Assembly: GCF_003704095.1 (NCBI RefSeq)
Contig: NW_020845410.1
Span: 620,001 to 684,000, forward strand
Origin: Pocillopora damicornis
Lineage: Eukaryota
Length of the DNA: 64,000 nt
Reading direction: 5' to 3'
In this document: one piece after another, positions 3,537 to 64,000 of the stretch
How the letters are laid out: every line of letters begins with the position of its first letter
Numbering within the stretch: position 1 is the first letter of the stretch
Notes under the pieces: generated by a model
Told to the model about the DNA's origin: nothing
Databases searched by the model: none
The model's input: only the letters and a program-made list of their open reading frames with translations
Program-made: the position numbers and the translations under genes

Positions 3537-4624
3537 AAATTGGCTGCCTCGCATGTAGTTCGATTCATCAAGGTTCATACGCAGTGAATTGAGATGACGC
3601 CCCAATTAAAGTCGAAAACATAAGAAACGAGCGTTCGATTTCTACTTATTCAGAAATTTGCATTACCCTAGGACAAAGAACATCTGAAGATGCGTGATAA
3701 ATTATTCAGTGTATCACAACTCTCCTCGGCGTATTATCAAATGAAAGGGAAAGGTTTCTAAGGAAAATGTAATTCTGCGTCGATGGGGGGCAATAACAGA
3801 ATAATTGGTATTATATCTTAGTTGTTCATGTAAATTGGCCACCGTTGGCTCTAACGAAGGGATTACGCTCGAAACTTCAGCTTTAGAAACTCTTAACGGT
3901 GGCAATTTACTTTATCCACTCAGTTGATAAACTTAATTATCCAACAATTCTTGCGTCGAGTTTAACCAGTTTATCCGTCGACTTTTTGTGCTATACTAGT
4001 ATATATATATATATTCATAGGTTATTTTGCGGTTGGTGAGCGCGTACAAGCGAACCAACTGCAAGTAACTTATTTATTATATACATACCGAGATTCATAA
4101 GTGAACAGAACTCAAAGATAAACTTATCTTTATTTTCTTTCAAAGGAAAACAACGCGCGGTGAAGCCGCCTCACTGTTCGAGAGTTGCACTGAAATGGCT
4201 TCCTTGTAAAATACTTTACATTTAAATTATTTAGCAAAAGTCCCGTTAAAAGGTAGAACTAATTAGATTAAAAAAAAGACATCCTGAAAATATGTCGAGA
4301 TAGTTCTAAGGAAGTTCAAAATTTGAAATGCAGAGGTGAAAACCCAAGACTTCATTCAGCTCTTGAAGAGTCAATTCGTCCATTTGTCTCAAATCGCCTT
4401 TCAAAACAAGAAATTCGTCGAACAGAGCAACATCGTGTTTGGTCTTTTGGTGTTTTCATTTTCCTGTCCGTCTATGAACTCTTCTACTGATGAATCTAGG
4501 CTCGGGTTTGAAGACATCTTTCTAAAGAAAAATGCGCCTGACTAATATGCTCGTTCAATGTAAGGTTGCTCGTAATGGTCAGACCTAGTGGTTTAGCACT
4601 AGACACCCTCTCTAGTTCATTATC

Positions 4625-59649: not shown

Positions 59650-61431
59650 TCAACTAAGCTTTCCATCTGCTCCACCATATGTTAGTGAAGTAAAGTCCAC
59701 TTCATGTCCAAGTGCCGCAGAAATCTCTGATGATAAAAGATCATGAAGATAAACACCATCATGTGTATATATCCAGGAACCATCTTTGAAATCGTACCTC
59801 TTGGGACCACTGAAATTTAACAGAATAGACAGAATTTTAACAATTCTGAGTAATCTCCAAAAAGTTTAAAAAAGAAGTGCATGATGAAAAAAGCTGAGAA
59901 AAGTAAGTTTGTACAAGTAGAGTGAAAAGGTAGACCTAGAGTAAATGTCTCTTGTTTACCTTGTTGGAGAGGACAACCATATTTGTTTGTTAGGGCTTTG
60001 TTTGTTGATCACATAGGTACCACGTCCAGCTGAAAGAACACAATTAAATCAAACCTCTTCTTTTTTTAAGCAAACAATTACATGTATAATATGACTCAGT
60101 TGCCTTTACATATGTCTCAAGCTAGTTCTCAGATACCTCTGGGATAATTTCGAGTTTAATGATATCACTTGGAAAAACCTCACTTCAAAGAGAAGGCAGA
60201 GGAGAGACTTGGAGTTCAAGAATTTTTTAAGAATATGCATATTGGGCAAGGATGAGAATTATCTTTAATTTGTGTAATAAAAACAAAATAATTTTACCTC
60301 CCAAGTTGACTGTTAGGACTCCATCCTAATAAGAAAAAAGAACATGGTGAGCCCTGAGATACTAATTGATTGTAAATTGTTTAATTGTTGTTTTTTTTTT
60401 AATGATGACAAAGTGATTGATATGGTTACCTGAAATAGCTAATATGTTGTTCTGGATTCTTGTTTTGAATTTTCCCAAATTCTTGTTTCTGTGTCCAACA
60501 CTTTAACAAGAATTACAAGGTAATAAACAGGTGATAAACAGCTGAAGAGAAAAGCACCCTGCCATTTTTTAAAATTATTTGACACTTCCAAATAGATCAA
60601 TTCTGGTTCAAGTAGTGGATGGAATTTAAAAAAGAAAATATCCCCTAAATATGCTTGGTTCCTTTTACCTTTTCTCTGACGGAGAAAAATGTCATTAAGG
60701 AAAGTGAATGCTAAGTCACTTTGTGAACCACTGGATTGTGCAATACATGAACATTGATCTATAATAACTCAATTGACACTCACACTCATCTGGACATCAT
60801 AGTCAGCAGGGCTTGATGGGCTTTCACCAAGGTCATCAAATAACTCAGCTATGGCATCCAGTGTCTCATCTGCGATACTGTGGTAAGATAACTCATCTAG
60901 GGTGCTGAAAGTATCAAAGTGCAATTTCCAGTTATCTCTGACATAGAAACAGGCACGGAGAATTTCATATTGTAGGAGTAATTAAAAAAACATATTCTAA
61001 TATTTTACATTGGAATGAACAAACCAGGATACAAACCTTTCGGTACTGAACGCTCTTGTCAGGGGAATCCTTCTTTGGTCGAGCTGAAATTGATCAAATG
61101 TGTTGTGAAAAGTTTGAAAGGAGGTCAATTTGATTGCAAAAGAAACAGCTGGAAATAATAAAAGAAGAAGCTAAACCACGGAAGGTTTCACCTGAAGTCT
61201 TTTCGACAGCAGCCCAACATGTGATCTTCTACTTGCAGACAGAATCAAGCTACTTCTACTGGAAACAACAGAGTAGAATGCCACAGTCCTTACACTAAAG
61301 TTTTTAAGGAAACGAATGCGTCGAAATGCAATCATGGCAGAAACTGTTCCCTTGCCATCGAAATGTCGAAATTGGCCAGGCGTTCTTACTAATTGGGAGA
61401 GAGAGCCTGGGTCCAGAGTTCCCGCGGCCAT
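59650..61431 (-). CDS. FXN: Frataxin, mitochondrial
   Basis: Exons read [25 protein letters not shown]...DYDV / DGVLTVNLG / [21 protein letters not shown] / GPKRYDF...[19 protein letters not shown]. There is an Arg/Ser-rich leader. The start (61431 or 61335) and the first intron are unresolved. Confidence 0.92.
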
Positions 61432-61448
61432 TTTGAAAGTGGCAGAGT

Positions 61449-62642
61449 ATGAAAGTCAAAGTGAAGCGTAAGTGGCCTTTTTCGCGAAACTTTAACCTAA
61501 TTTGACTTTGTTTCATGCTCTATTAGATGGAAATAATTTTTAAATCTTACGTATTTGCAATGTGCTTTTTCTTTTCTCTTATGATATGGCATACTTCTTG
61601 ATCCTGCTGTTGCACGAAAAATTCATCAAATGGCTGATTATTTTAATTTTATCCTTTTGTCACCATTCAGAGTGAGTACAAACAACTTGGCTTTTAACAC
61701 TCCTATTATTCGGAACACATAGCTCTTGAGGCCATTTCGATGTTAAGTGGGAATTAGCAACCATAATTACCTATCATCTGTCGAAAAATTTAGGTGAAAT
61801 GATAGGGGAAGAGTTTTTTTTGTATTAAGAAGATGATTATGTGGGACAGGGAAGGCGAGATTTCCCCTCCTTCATGTTTGGCTAAGGTCTACTGTACTTT
61901 ATTGAAAATTATTAAGATTATTCCCCACTTACCAGCTGTAGTGAAAGTTGTGACCAAAGAACCCTTTCTGTCATTGCCACCCACATTACATGTAACAGTG
62001 TCTAGGATGCATCAGTCCCATGTAGACATGTAGGTTTAAATAATTTTCAAGTAAAATGTAGTACAAAATGGTACTGTTAGTAAGTAGTAATATTAGGCCA
62101 AGAAAACTGGAATAACCTCAAGCCTGTGAATGGCTGTAGCTTGTGAAGGGTTGCTTGATCTTAAATTACCCACTCAGACATAAATGTGATCATGTGTTCC
62201 TTAGGTGGACTGGTGTGGCCACATGGCGCTGGGTTGCCAATGATGACAATTGTGGTATTTGTCGCATGGCATTTGATGGTTGTTGTCCAGACTGCAAGAT
62301 ACCAGGGGATGACTGTCCTTTAGGTAAGATCACAATGTTTTGTTCAAGCAAGCTGCATTACTCTGCAAGTGATGGCATTTTCAGCTCTCACTTCAGGTTA
62401 TGACATAATTGTCGAAATCAATACTTGTAATACAAATATGACTATTCAGGTGATACTTTCTCATGACATGTGATCTTGAACCAGGAGATACCTTTATAAG
62501 ACTCAACTATCCGTTTCCTCTTTCAGTTTGGGGTCGTTGTTCTCATGTCTTTCACATGCACTGTATTCTTAAATGGCTAAACTCGCAGCTGCATCAACAG
62601 CTGTGCCCGATGTGCAGGCAGGAGTGGCAATTCAAGGAATAG
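61449..62642 (+). CDS. ANAPC11: Anaphase-promoting complex subunit 11 (RING-H2), exons 61449-61467, 61671 (1 nt), 62205-62323, 62527-62642
   Basis: The spliced product is MKVKVKQWTGVATWRWVANDDNCGICRMAFDGCCPDCKIPGDDCPLVWGRCSHVFHMHCILKWLNSQLHQQLCPMCRQEWQFKE*. Exon lengths sum to 19+1+119+116=255 nt, i.e. 84 aa plus stop. Confidence 0.93.
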
Positions 62643-63225
62643 ACATGTGCTTCATAAACTACTCACTATTTTAACTGGCTTTTAAGGTTGTTGGTTTGAT
62701 GCCTTGAGAATGGTGTTTGCTCTCTTCAGCTGTTCACGGAGTGAGGAATGGATGCTGATAGATTAGGGGATAGTTAAGAGAACAGGAAGTAACTTTGATC
62801 AGAACTAAAGCACAGTGCAAGTGTGAAGAGGTAGTCCAAAAGCTGACTTGTCTGTCGAAAATAAATTCAGTACACTTCCACATAATGAGCTTATATCTGA
62901 ACTCATCAGGAAATTTGTGCTTTTTTAAAGACAAAACAAAATATCCCTACTTTCATTGTAAATTATCCATGTTTATTTCAAAGATTACAATCTGTAAAAT
63001 GCTTGCTGTGGCTACCTAAGAAAACATTAAATTATTGCAAAACACATTTACATGCTTGTTTTTTCCTTAAGGGGGGCCTGTACACATCATTTACATCCTA
63101 AAAGGTCTTGAAATAACTTTACTCTTAGGGAACACAATTCACACTAGCTTAGGAGGAACAGACCAGCACCACATCAATATTACACTGCAAACAATTCAGT
63201 TTGAGTGAATCACAGTAAGCTCCAT

Positions 63226-64000
63226 TCAATTTGTTCCAGACCAGAACCCTGATCCTTGGTAGCCACCCTGATGACCCTTATTCTGCCCTTGTTTAGGCCC
63301 CTGTCCTTGAGACCCTCTCTGAGATGATCCAGGCTGGCCTGTTTCCATATGATGAGGCATATGGTGGTGGTAGTGGGATGGTGGGTGGTGTTGCTGTACA
63401 GGGGTCATCATTGACATGAATGGGTGTCCTGTATGTGGATAGCTTCCCAAAGGACCATGCTGTCCTGTCATGGACAGATTTAACGCTGGTGGTGGAGGTG
63501 TACCACCCATAAATGGTTTGTTGTCATTGAACTGAAAAAAGGAACAAAGTATTTCACATTACTATAAGCAGAAAAAATGGTCATTACAAACTAAACCACA
63601 TTTGACCCATTAGTTATAGTTGCCTAATGATAAGAGGTTAATATTTGCGATACTGACAAGCACCTAATAATAGAGAATGCCAACACTTGCATAAATGTTA
63701 TTTGTAGGTGGGAATTGAATCTTCCACTGAGTGTATTTGCAAACATTTTATTGTTGGGTCCTTTGACATAACCCTTAACTGTCTTCTAAAGAAAGTGTCA
63801 CAGATAAATAAGAGAAATGTGGCCAAAGAAACATCTGATTACTAACCCAGTGAATTTCCTTCCTTAACAAATAAATAAATTTATCATCATTTACTTTGAA
63901 CACTGCAAATAAACAATATTTTACCTTTCCAACTTGGGGTTTGTAAGAAGCTCCTGAGAGATCTGAAGCACTACTTACAGCTGGACCTGTCAACAGAAAA
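63226..64000 (-). CDS. UBAP2L: 3' exons of UBAP2/UBAP2L (Lingerer)-like protein; gene continues beyond the window
   Basis: SDLSGASYKPQ then FNDNKPFMGGTPPPPALNL...HPFMSMMTPVQQHH...GSSQRG...FWSGTN*. This parallels the UBAP2L C-terminus (GTP..FNL, PFM..TP.QQ.H, GS.QR, terminal W..N). Confidence 0.75.

What the first reader, a model, noticed from the sequence alone, without database searches (positions are those of the whole stretch)
61449..62210. Single-nucleotide exon (A at 61671) in an animal ANAPC11 gene
Seen in sequence: exon 1 ATG AAA GTC AAA GTG AAG C ends at a perfect GTAAGT donor (61468, phase 1). The large exon starts ttag|G TGG ACT (62205, phase 2). Direct joining is out of frame by exactly one base. 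Between them lie a branch-like CTGAT (61634), a pyrimidine tract, cattcAG (61669-70), one base A (61671) and immediately GTGAGT (61672). Including it builds codon C|A|G = Gln7 from three exons and gives MKVKVKQWTGVATW..., 84 aa, the canonical APC11 length. Established knowledge: a single-adenine exon has been reported in Arabidopsis APC11, whose protein also has Gln before the first Trp. Inference: the 1-nt exon may predate the plant/animal split and survive in this lineage. It would need an unusual ordered or recursive-type splicing route and could act as a splicing-dependent control on an essential cell-cycle E3 ligase. Standard annotation pipelines are likely to miss it.
Basis: partly seen in the sequence, partly recalled or inferred. 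Interest (0 to 1): 0.96.

Follow-up and report, generated by a model that had tools for sequence, protein, structure and literature searches.

The report
One-base exon in coral ANAPC11
In this coral, the gene for an essential cell-division enzyme subunit reads in frame only if a lone letter A between two introns is spliced in as an exon; this layout is known from plant APC11, and I also find it in other corals, two sea anemones and probably an acorn worm.

Summary
Exon 1 (61449-61467, 19 nt) ends in phase 1 at GTAAGT. The next large exon starts in phase 2 at 62205. Between them lies cattcAG|A|GTGAGT, with the A at 61671.

The window matches Pocillopora damicornis, and the gene is single copy with no retrocopy. 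RNA contigs of one run carry the GT..AG joint 61671->62205, and the RefSeq model XP_027044675.1 is built on the same joint.

Six other hexacorals (Stylophora, Orbicella, Acropora, Porites, Exaiptasia, Nematostella) and the hemichordate Glandiceps all have a 19-nt phase-1 exon 1 and a phase-2 exon 2. Each has exactly one strong AG|N|GTRAG(T/C) site between them. N is A in corals (Gln) and G in the others (Arg or Ser). The Exaiptasia RefSeq 84-aa isoform has the Arg that its G predicts.

Land-plant APC11 has the same 19 nt | A | G-TGG layout.

I did not see the exon 1-to-A joint in RNA. It lies about 29 nt from the mRNA's 5' end, which contigs cannot resolve. The main rival is a weak donor 4 nt downstream, giving 85 aa.

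Verdict: a real single-nucleotide exon (about 0.85). I found no report of a nuclear one in an animal in the searched literature. Public annotations misread it in about a dozen species.

The parts
61424..61435 (+). GCGGCCATTTTG motif just upstream of the start codon. It contains the GCCAT core that I recall for YY1 sites, and probably belongs to the core promoter shared with the divergent frataxin gene.
   Evidence: the same motif, or a close variant, sits 10-40 nt upstream of the ATG in all seven anthozoan loci. The function is inferred, not tested.
61449..61467 (+). Coding exon 1, 19 nt (Met-Lys-Val-Lys-Val-Lys plus the first base C of codon 7), phase 1. The longest RNA contig starts at 61439.
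   Evidence: One search shows that the 19-nt length and MKV(K/T)(V/I)K coding are kept in 8 species, with changes mainly at third codon positions.
61468..61670 (+). Intron 1 (203 nt): GTAAGT donor, CTGAT branch-like site at 61634-38, pyrimidine tract, CAG acceptor.
   Evidence: Its removal was not observed directly. It is kept in the contigs and read as coding in RefSeq model P0149.
61671..61671 (+). Single-nucleotide exon A, the middle base of codon 7 (C-A-G, Gln).
   Evidence: It is the only strong AG|N|GT in the interval, its donor is used in RNA, and it sits at the identity peak (0.97) of the Pocillopora-Stylophora comparison.
61672..62204 (+). Intron 2 (533 nt): GTGAGT donor, ttccttAG acceptor.
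   Evidence: table 5: joint 61671->62205, GT..AG, in 2 contigs of run X5. The same joint underlies RefSeq XP_027044675.1.
62205..62323 (+). Exon 3, 119 nt (third base of codon 7, then Trp8 through the first part of the RING-H2 domain).
   Evidence: 95-100% identical to annotated APC11 proteins.
62324..62526 (+). Intron 3 (203 nt), removed in all four RNA runs laid.
   Evidence: table 5: joint 62321->62525 (cut +2), GT..AG, in X1, X13, X14 and X5.
62527..62642 (+). Last coding exon (rest of the RING-H2 domain, stop TAG at 62640-42). The 3' UTR continues and there is an AATAAA at 62860-65.

Best explanation
The window holds the single-copy ANAPC11 gene of a Pocillopora coral (matches P. damicornis). 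Its coding sequence is split into four exons of 19, 1, 119 and 116 nt. The lone A at 61671 is a constitutive spliceosomal exon that supplies the middle base of codon 7 (C|A|G, Gln), giving the canonical 84-residue APC11.

Most likely route: intron 2 goes first. Its GTGAGT donor, right after the A, is paired with the acceptor at 62204 while exon 1 + intron 1 + A act as an ordinary 223-nt first exon. Intron 1 then goes as an ordinary 203-nt intron whose downstream exon is A plus exon 3 (120 nt). Neither step needs a spliceosome to define a 1-nt exon.

Shown: the sequence anatomy, use of the donor after the A, molecules that keep introns 1 and 2 while intron 3 is gone, and conservation. Inferred: removal of intron 1 at CAG|A in this species, and the order of the two steps.
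For: (1) Anatomy is as described, and the only GT-AG ways to an in-frame full-length protein are the A exon or a donor 4 nt downstream (own enumeration).

(2) RNA contigs of run X5 join 61671 to 62205 with GT..AG ends (2 contigs; the largest short side is 25 nt, apparently on the intron-1 tail, since depth rises in the 61649-61705 bin). That would be the intermediate with intron 2 removed and intron 1 kept.

(3) RefSeq models are built on the same kind of joint. P. damicornis XP_027044675.1 equals window 61586-61671 joined to 62205 onward. By their protein signature (Ser/Leu-Glu-Trp, or Ser-Gly-Trp in Exaiptasia), so do the models of P. verrucosa, Orbicella, Oculina and Exaiptasia isoform X1.

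(4) Stylophora, Orbicella, Acropora, Porites, Exaiptasia, Nematostella and the hemichordate Glandiceps all have a 19-nt phase-1 exon 1 followed by GTRAGT (GTAGGT in Glandiceps) and a phase-2 exon 2. Each has exactly one strong AG|N|GTRAG(T/C) site, 126-421 nt after exon 1. The chance of such a site is 1-11% per species.

(5) N varies: A in five corals, G in three others. Each time it gives a sensible codon (Gln, Arg, Ser). The Exaiptasia RefSeq 84-aa isoform X2 has Arg7 = C+G+T, which is what its G exon predicts and not what the +4 donor would give.

(6) The identity peak (0.97) between Pocillopora and Stylophora inside the 737-nt interval is centred on the A, as high as in the coding exons. 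Divergent RNA haplotypes carry many differences in the intron but none between 61641 and 61697 (table 3).

(7) The gene is single copy with no retrocopy or second APC11, so this locus must yield a working protein.

(8) Exon 1 codes the conserved APC11 N-terminus, with changes mainly at third codon positions. The stretch that the models read as an N-terminal extension is not conserved between genera.

(9) Precedent: the same 19 nt | A | G-TGG layout was proven by mutagenesis in Arabidopsis and is conserved in land plants.
Against: No read or contig showing exon 1 joined to the A was obtained.

The four runs laid were contigs only. In X1, X13 and X14 the main contig runs unspliced through both small-exon introns.

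The 61671->62205 joint was seen in only one of four runs.

Two RefSeq models (Acropora digitifera, Glandiceps talaboti) use the +4 donor and give 85 aa. I could not check whether RNA supports them.

The Exaiptasia 84-aa model could also arise from a non-canonical TA..AG intron, because its single base G equals the first intron base.

That RefSeq models rest on RNA-seq joints is my assumption about the pipeline, not something I verified.
Confidence: 0.85

Rival explanations
1. Exon 1 is 23 nt long. The GT at positions 5-6 of the GTAAGT donor (61472) is the real donor and joins straight to 62205. This gives Lys-Arg-Lys-Trp and an 85-residue protein, and the AG|A|GT site is an unrelated cryptic or alternative site.
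For: It is the only other GT-AG solution that keeps the frame. RefSeq models of Acropora digitifera (Lys-Arg-Glu-Trp) and Glandiceps (Lys-Ser-Ser-Trp) are built this way.
Against: A GT at +5/+6 is part of every GTRAGT consensus, so this option exists by construction. The resulting donors are weak and unalike (GTGGCC, GTTATT, GTTAAG, GTATTT, GTAGGC, GTTTGC, GTCAAG) and overlap a perfect U1 site. The inserted residue would vary (Lys, Glu, Asn, Ser) in an otherwise fixed N-terminus, whereas most correctly modelled APC11 proteins listed are 84 aa. It leaves unexplained the conserved, used donor after the A. The Exaiptasia 84-aa RefSeq isoform excludes it in that species.
Confidence: 0.07
2. The real protein starts at the internal ATG (61586) and is the 106-residue RefSeq product. 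Exon 1 is only a short upstream ORF in a long first exon, and there is a single intron, 61672-62204.
For: RefSeq annotates exactly this in two Pocillopora species. The joint 61671->62205 with an intron-1 tail upstream is what the contigs show.
Against: The extension is not conserved between genera. It is 28 residues before the joint codon in Pocillopora, 10 in Orbicella, 3 in Oculina and 16 in Exaiptasia, all unrelated in sequence. In Acropora the nearby ATG is out of frame (own count). Exon 1 keeps the universal APC11 N-terminus under coding constraint in 8 species and always ends at a strong donor. From established structural knowledge, not tested here, that N-terminal strand is what docks APC11 on APC2.
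Confidence: 0.04
3. A non-canonical intron (TA..AG) starts one base later, so the extra base in the mRNA is the G at 61468 (codon CGG, Arg).
For: It would give 84 aa, and Arg7 is what the sea anemones have. In Exaiptasia and Nematostella this reading cannot be told apart from a G exon.
Against: TA..AG introns are extremely rare (established knowledge). GTAAGT at 61468 is a perfect canonical donor. This reading does not explain the conserved AG|A|GTRAGT site, or why its donor is used in RNA.
Confidence: 0.02
4. The frame break is an assembly error, or the locus is a decaying pseudogene.
For: None beyond the frame break itself.
Against: Independent RNA contigs match the assembly with no indel at either exon edge. 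Seven other species have the same phases. The locus is single copy, expressed, spliced at intron 3, and 95-100% identical in protein to relatives.
Confidence: 0.01

Closest known systems
Single-nucleotide exon of Arabidopsis / land-plant APC11 (Guo & Liu 2015, PMC4674806; Yu et al. 2022, PMC8831610)
   Same: It is the same gene with the same architecture: a 19-nt first coding exon ending in C, a lone A flanked by CAG and GT(A/G)AG(T)-type sites, then an exon starting G-TGG. The codon is C|A|G = Gln7, the protein has 84 residues, and annotation is wrong in nearly every genome. In moss, an isoform carries the base at the end of a larger exon, which resembles the intron-1-retaining form seen here.
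   Different: This is an animal. The base is not fixed across animals (A in corals, G in anemones and in the acorn worm). There is no mutational proof and no cDNA across the first joint. The plant papers place the origin in early plants, which the animal cases call into question.
1-nt microexon of plant VPS55 and the one-nucleotide exon of Fusarium CYP621A (PMC8831610; PMC12940212)
   Same: A single base between a phase-1 and a phase-2 boundary, conserved AG|N|GT with strong GTRAGT-type donors, found by frame logic plus comparison, and missed by gene models.
   Different: These are unrelated genes and lineages. In those cases reads across both joints were shown.
Recursive (ratchet-point) splicing at AG|GT sites in long introns of Drosophila and vertebrates
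   Same: A juxtaposed acceptor and donor inside what looks like one intron, removed in two ordered steps.
   Different: Recursive sites leave zero bases in the mRNA and serve very long introns. Here one base is kept, it is coding, and the whole interval is only 737 nt.
Potato invertase 9-nt mini-exon (cited in PMC4674806)
   Same: The downstream intron is removed before the upstream one, the order suggested here by the intermediate seen.
   Different: 9 nt rather than 1 nt, a plant, and tested experimentally.
Placozoan mitochondrial cox1 single-base-pair exon (PMC5436844, title and abstract only)
   Same: A one-base exon in an animal.
   Different: It is in a mitochondrial gene. The abstract mentions a fragmented cox1 and trans-splicing introns, so presumably not the nuclear spliceosome. 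I did not read the paper's body.

Membership tests
[quoted passage not shown] | Sequence membership: zf-ANAPC11 (PF12861) RING-H2 domain, about 84 residues, N-terminus Met-Lys-Val-Lys | tested here: met
   The exon-3 ORF hits APC11 proteins at up to 100% identity, all carrying PF12861/PF12678. RefSeq names the same locus APC11-like. It is the only such locus in the genome.
Single-nucleotide spliceosomal exon (plant APC11 type) | Flanking exons are out of frame by exactly one base, with no other canonical in-frame join of the expected length | tested here: met
   The phases are 1 and 2. The only other GT-AG join is the +4 donor, which gives 85 aa.
Single-nucleotide spliceosomal exon (plant APC11 type) | An AG|N|GT with good acceptor and donor context between the flanking exons, conserved in relatives | tested here: met
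   one strong site per species in 8 species, and an identity peak on it.
Single-nucleotide spliceosomal exon (plant APC11 type) | RNA uses the donor directly after the single base | tested here: met
   joint 61671->62205, GT..AG, in 2 contigs of X5. The RefSeq P0149 structure also uses it.
Single-nucleotide spliceosomal exon (plant APC11 type) | Mature cDNA carries exactly that base between the two flanking exons (upstream joint used) | tested here: inconclusive
This was not seen in Pocillopora. Only contigs were available, and the joint lies about 29 nt from the 5' end of the longest RNA contig. Indirect support comes from Exaiptasia RefSeq isoform X2, which has Arg7 = C+G+T.
Single-nucleotide spliceosomal exon (plant APC11 type) | Changing or deleting the base changes the cDNA or breaks the frame (minigene test of Guo & Liu) | not testable with these tools
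   Bench experiment.
Orthology of the exon with the plant one (same two intron positions) | Introns after nt 19 and after nt 20 of the CDS in both lineages | tested here: met
   Animal side, from DNA. Plant side, indirectly: the Arabidopsis exon-1 primer ends at nt 19 (C) and the mutagenesis primers give CAG[A]GTAGG. Plant mis-annotations read through ag|G-TGG or show the Glu-Trp joint signature, and Beta vulgaris has Gln-Trp. My look-up for a plant locus failed.
Orthology of the exon with the plant one (same two intron positions) | Continuous presence, or traceable loss, in lineages between plants and animals | not tested
   Only scattered data. Lepidoptera have just the phase-1 intron, a state reachable by loss of intron 2, and a beetle copy is intronless. 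No sponge, placozoan, fungal or protist locus was examined.

The most novel reading that the evidence does not exclude
The one-base exon of APC11, two introns one nucleotide apart in codon 7, is the same ancestral feature in land plants, cnidarians and deuterostomes. It would then have been inherited from the common ancestor of plants and animals and lost piecemeal elsewhere: intron 2 lost in Lepidoptera and bivalves, both introns lost in beetle retro-type copies, monocots and perhaps vertebrates. That would make it the smallest and among the oldest conserved exons known. It would also show that a spliceosome able to handle it, by ordered removal of the two introns, has been maintained for over a billion years.
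Probability: 0.4. Interest if true: 0.92.

Novelty: new member of a known kind. Interest (0 to 1): 0.82.

Why it matters
One-base exons are known from only a handful of genes: plant APC11 and VPS55, and Fusarium CYP621A. In the library searched, none is reported for a nuclear gene of an animal.

Finding it in an animal, in the same gene and at the same codon position as in plants, makes an open question about intron evolution directly testable. The question is whether two introns one base apart can persist since the plant-animal ancestor, or whether this layout arises repeatedly.

It gives animal splicing research a natural substrate for asking how the spliceosome copes with an exon too small for exon definition.

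There is a practical side. The APC11 protein is wrong in public annotations of at least a dozen cnidarian and hemichordate genomes, and it is an essential, much-used marker gene. The same frame logic can be used to screen other genes.

The apparent persistence of molecules that keep both small-exon introns after intron 3 is gone hints at slow, possibly regulated, maturation of an essential cell-cycle transcript. That remains untested.

Tried and rejected
(1) Reads. The single read-laying run returned contigs only, with no joint from 61467. The longest RNA contig starts at 61439, so the first joint lies about 29 nt from the 5' end. That is shorter than the 31-nt words the run index is built on, and I assume the assembler drops such short ends. 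Absence in contigs is therefore uninformative, and I do not count the unspliced X1, X13 and X14 contigs as evidence against.

(2) A scan of metagenome contigs with the 19-nt exon 1 gave 14 hits, all unrelated chance matches.

(3) I looked for a retrocopy in the same genome as a fossil of the mature mRNA. There is none, and the gene is single copy.

(4) I looked for a full-length 84-aa coral protein among database clusters. Only mis-modelled N-termini and 51-aa ORFs from unspliced DNA or RNA were listed.

(5) I first took Asp-Trp and Glu-Trp N-terminal signatures in insect RNA contigs as further one-base exons. I dropped this reading after the Lepidoptera loci showed a plain phase-1 intron, exon 1 A|GT...ag|GT-TGG. 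Such signatures also arise from simple read-through of a phase-1 acceptor.

(6) Look-ups for Exaiptasia isoform X2 and Beta vulgaris isoform X2 were not on record, and one ENA contig had no DNA.

(7) Earlier findings of this scan: nothing relevant.

Exons were searched one by one by reference.

Full report
**What is in the sequence.**
- The ATG is at 61449. Exon 1 reads ATG AAA GTC AAA GTG AAG C and ends at 61467 in front of a perfect GTAAGT.
- The next recognisable exon starts behind ttccttAG with G TGG ACT at 62205. It runs to 62323, and the last coding exon is 62527-62642.
- Exon 1 ends after the first base of codon 7, and the large exon begins with the third base.
- At 61669-61677 lies AG|A|GTGAGT, preceded by a pyrimidine-rich stretch and a CTGAT 33 nt upstream.
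- With the A included, the CDS is 19+1+119+116 = 255 nt, i.e. 84 codons plus stop.
- My enumeration of GT and AG sites finds only one other canonical in-frame join. It uses the GT at 61472, which is positions 5-6 of the GTAAGT itself, and gives 85 residues (Lys-Arg-Lys-Trp).

**Which organism and gene.**
- The exon-3 ORF, searched by reference, hits APC11 proteins at up to 100% identity.
- The RefSeq protein XP_027044675.1 of Pocillopora damicornis (P0149) equals the translation of window 61586-61669, a Glu codon made of g61670, A61671 and G62205, and then the remaining exons.
- A 51-aa ORF found on many public contigs equals window 61316-61471.
- The genome has 234 Mb in 4,393 contigs and holds one APC11 locus only, with no retrocopy.
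- So this single locus has to produce the essential protein.

**RNA evidence.** I had one run search and one read-laying run. All four runs laid were stored as assembled contigs.
- Intron 3 (62324-62526) is removed in all four runs.
- In run X5, two contigs join 61671 to 62205 with GT..AG ends. The largest short side is 25 nt, and depth rises in the 61649-61705 bin. I take that side to lie on the tail of intron 1 (about 61647-61671).
- On that reading, these molecules have lost intron 2 and kept intron 1. The RefSeq model has this same structure.
- In X1, X13 and X14 the main contig runs unspliced through both introns 1 and 2 while intron 3 is gone.
- No contig joins 61467 to anything. This absence carries little weight. 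The longest RNA contig begins at 61439, so the first joint lies about 29 nt from the 5' end. That is shorter than the 31-nt words the run index is built on, and I assume such short ends are usually dropped in assembly.
- The contigs do show two things. The genomic sequence is right at both exon edges, with no indels (table 4). Divergent haplotypes carry many intron differences but none between 61641 and 61697 (table 3).
- Table 3 lists no difference at 62210. Record 13 of X5 starts at 62211, which I read as two sequence paths merging there. P. verrucosa has Ile where the window has Thr (ACT against ATT), so I suspect that variant. This is inference.

**Comparison with relatives.** I fetched the loci behind annotated proteins of Acropora digitifera, Orbicella faveolata, Exaiptasia diaphana, Nematostella vectensis, Porites evermanni and Stylophora pistillata.
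- Every one has a 19-nt exon 1 coding Met-Lys-Val-(Lys/Thr)-(Val/Ile)-Lys plus C, followed by GTRAGT, and an exon 2 that starts one base before the Trp codon.
- Every one has exactly one AG|N|GT with a strong donor in between, 126-214 nt after exon 1. It is cag[A]gtgagt in Stylophora and Orbicella, cag[A]gtaagt in Acropora, aag[A]gtaagc in Porites, cag[G]gtaagt in Exaiptasia and tag[G]gtaagt in Nematostella.
- In dinucleotide shuffles such a site turns up in 1-11% of intervals per species.
- In a seven-way alignment the only invariant block is AG.GT.AG.
- Between Pocillopora and Stylophora the identity peak inside the interval (0.97) sits on the A, level with coding sequence, while the rest of the introns range from about 0.2 to 0.8.
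- Exon 1 differs between species mainly at third codon positions, so it is under coding constraint in the Met-Lys-Val frame.

**The base varies and the protein follows.**
- Corals have A, giving C-A-G (Gln).
- Nematostella has G with exon 2 starting G, giving Arg.
- Exaiptasia has G with exon 2 starting T, giving C-G-T (Arg).
- RefSeq lists two Exaiptasia isoforms. X1 starts at an ATG inside intron 1 and ends its extension with Ser-Gly-Trp, i.e. tca-gG|T-TGG, the same intermediate-type structure as the Pocillopora model. X2 has 84 residues and reads Met-Lys-Val-Lys-Ile-Lys-Arg-Trp.
- X2 is what exon 1 + G + exon 2 gives. The +4 donor would instead give Lys-Arg-Asn-Trp and 85 residues.
- Because the Exaiptasia base equals the first base of intron 1, that model alone cannot exclude a TA..AG intron. 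In corals the two readings differ (A against G).

**Beyond cnidarians.**
- The hemichordate Glandiceps talaboti has a 19-nt exon 1 ending in A before GTAGGT, and an exon 2 starting T-TGG behind ctcAG.
- It has a single perfect cag[G]gtgagt 421 nt into the interval. A-G-T is Ser, which would restore the common Met-Lys-Val-Thr-Ile-Lys-Ser-Trp.
- Its RefSeq model instead has Ser-Ser-Trp and 85 residues, which is the +4 donor. For Glandiceps this is prediction only.
- Lepidoptera have just the phase-1 intron (A|GT...ag|GT-TGG), a state reachable from the one-base-exon layout by loss of intron 2. One beetle copy is intronless.

**The plant precedent.**
- Guo & Liu proved by mutagenesis that a lone A is an exon of Arabidopsis APC11.
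- Their primer table gives an exon-1 primer of 19 nt ending in C, and the context CAG[A]GTAGG.
- Yu et al. found it conserved in land plants, and found that moss also makes an isoform with the base at the end of a larger exon.
- Plant proteins in my hit list either read through ag|G-TGG or carry the Glu-Trp joint signature, and Beta vulgaris has Gln-Trp.
- So plants and hexacorals share both intron positions, after nt 19 and after nt 20 of the CDS.
- In the paper library I found no report of a nuclear one-base exon in an animal. A 2026 paper calls the Fusarium case the second example known.

**How it most likely works.** If intron 2 goes first, the upstream unit seen by the spliceosome is exon 1 + intron 1 + A, 223 nt long, and its donor is a perfect GTGAGT. 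After that, intron 1 is an ordinary 203-nt intron with a GTAAGT donor, a branch-like CTGAT, a pyrimidine tract and CAG, and its downstream exon is A + 119 nt. Neither step requires recognition of a 1-nt exon. The intermediate seen and the RefSeq models fit this order, which is also the order reported for the potato mini-exon. The reverse order would regenerate a donor at the new joint, as in recursive splicing, and is not excluded. Both contig series show molecules that keep both introns after intron 3 has been removed. This suggests slow removal, but contigs give no amounts, so a regulatory role remains speculation.

**Rivals.**
- The +4 donor is available wherever the donor is GTRAGT, so its existence carries no information. 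The donors it would use are weak and unalike. The inserted residue would vary in a conserved N-terminus. It also leaves the conserved and used site at the A unexplained.
- The 106-residue RefSeq product would replace the conserved N-terminal strand by a stretch that is unrelated in Orbicella, Oculina and Exaiptasia, and that is out of frame in Acropora.
- An assembly error is excluded by independent contigs and by seven other genomes.

**Annotation.** The same gene has at least ten different wrong N-termini in public records: Pocillopora damicornis (106 and 142 aa), P. verrucosa, Orbicella, Oculina, Stylophora, three Porites species, Desmophyllum, Acropora, Nematostella and Glandiceps.

**Limits.**
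- The first joint is inferred, not observed.
- That RefSeq joints rest on RNA-seq is my assumption.
- The plant side rests on papers and protein signatures, because the plant locus look-up failed.

Noticed in passing
window 61424-61435; L001, L002, L003, L004, L005 and L006 just upstream of each ATG: The motif GCGGCCATTTTG (GCCAT core, which I recall from YY1 sites) lies 14-25 nt before the APC11 start codon. It is kept with small changes in all seven anthozoans. The longest RNA contig starts 4 nt after it (61439), so the 5' leader may be only about 10 nt long.
   Followed up: partly
window about 60780-61345 (minus strand) and 63200-64000 (minus strand); L001-L006: APC11 sits head to head with a frataxin gene. 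RNA contigs of the two genes end about 95 nt apart, with no coverage at 61364-61420. It is tail to tail with UBAP2. The frataxin-APC11 pairing is kept from Nematostella to corals, and UBAP2 follows in the scleractinians.
   Followed up: partly
window 61316-61471: A 51-codon ORF in another frame overlaps exon 1 and stops at the TAA inside the GTAAGT donor. It is called as a protein on many public contigs in at least six variants. It was fused to APC11 in the GenBank model pdam_00000793 (142 aa) by joining 61467 directly to 62205. It is probably an annotation artefact.
   Followed up: partly
window 62205-62323 joined to about 62688: Pocillopora verrucosa RefSeq isoform X2 (94 aa) joins the end of exon 3 to an acceptor in what is the 3' UTR here. 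This drops the second half of the RING-H2 domain. It may be a minor or non-productive isoform.
   Followed up: no
window 62030-62033 and 61783-61845: RNA contigs of three runs (X13, X14, X5) carry about 50 other letters in place of 2 at 62031-32, plus several small indels and about 4% substitutions in intron 2. This is a second haplotype or sister species with an insertion in the intron.
   Followed up: no
L004 4001-4036 (Nematostella); L006 about 4003-4010 (Stylophora): The RefSeq models of these two species start at short ATG-containing pieces inside intron 2 that end in phase 2. The Nematostella one is flagged LOW QUALITY. They may be alternative first exons, or fixes invented by the pipeline to restore the frame.
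   Followed up: partly
protein P0030 (Dreissena polymorpha isoform X2): A mussel isoform inserts 37 residues exactly between Lys6 and Ser7-Trp8, at the same codon-7 intron site. This suggests a cassette exon at this position in bivalves.
   Followed up: no
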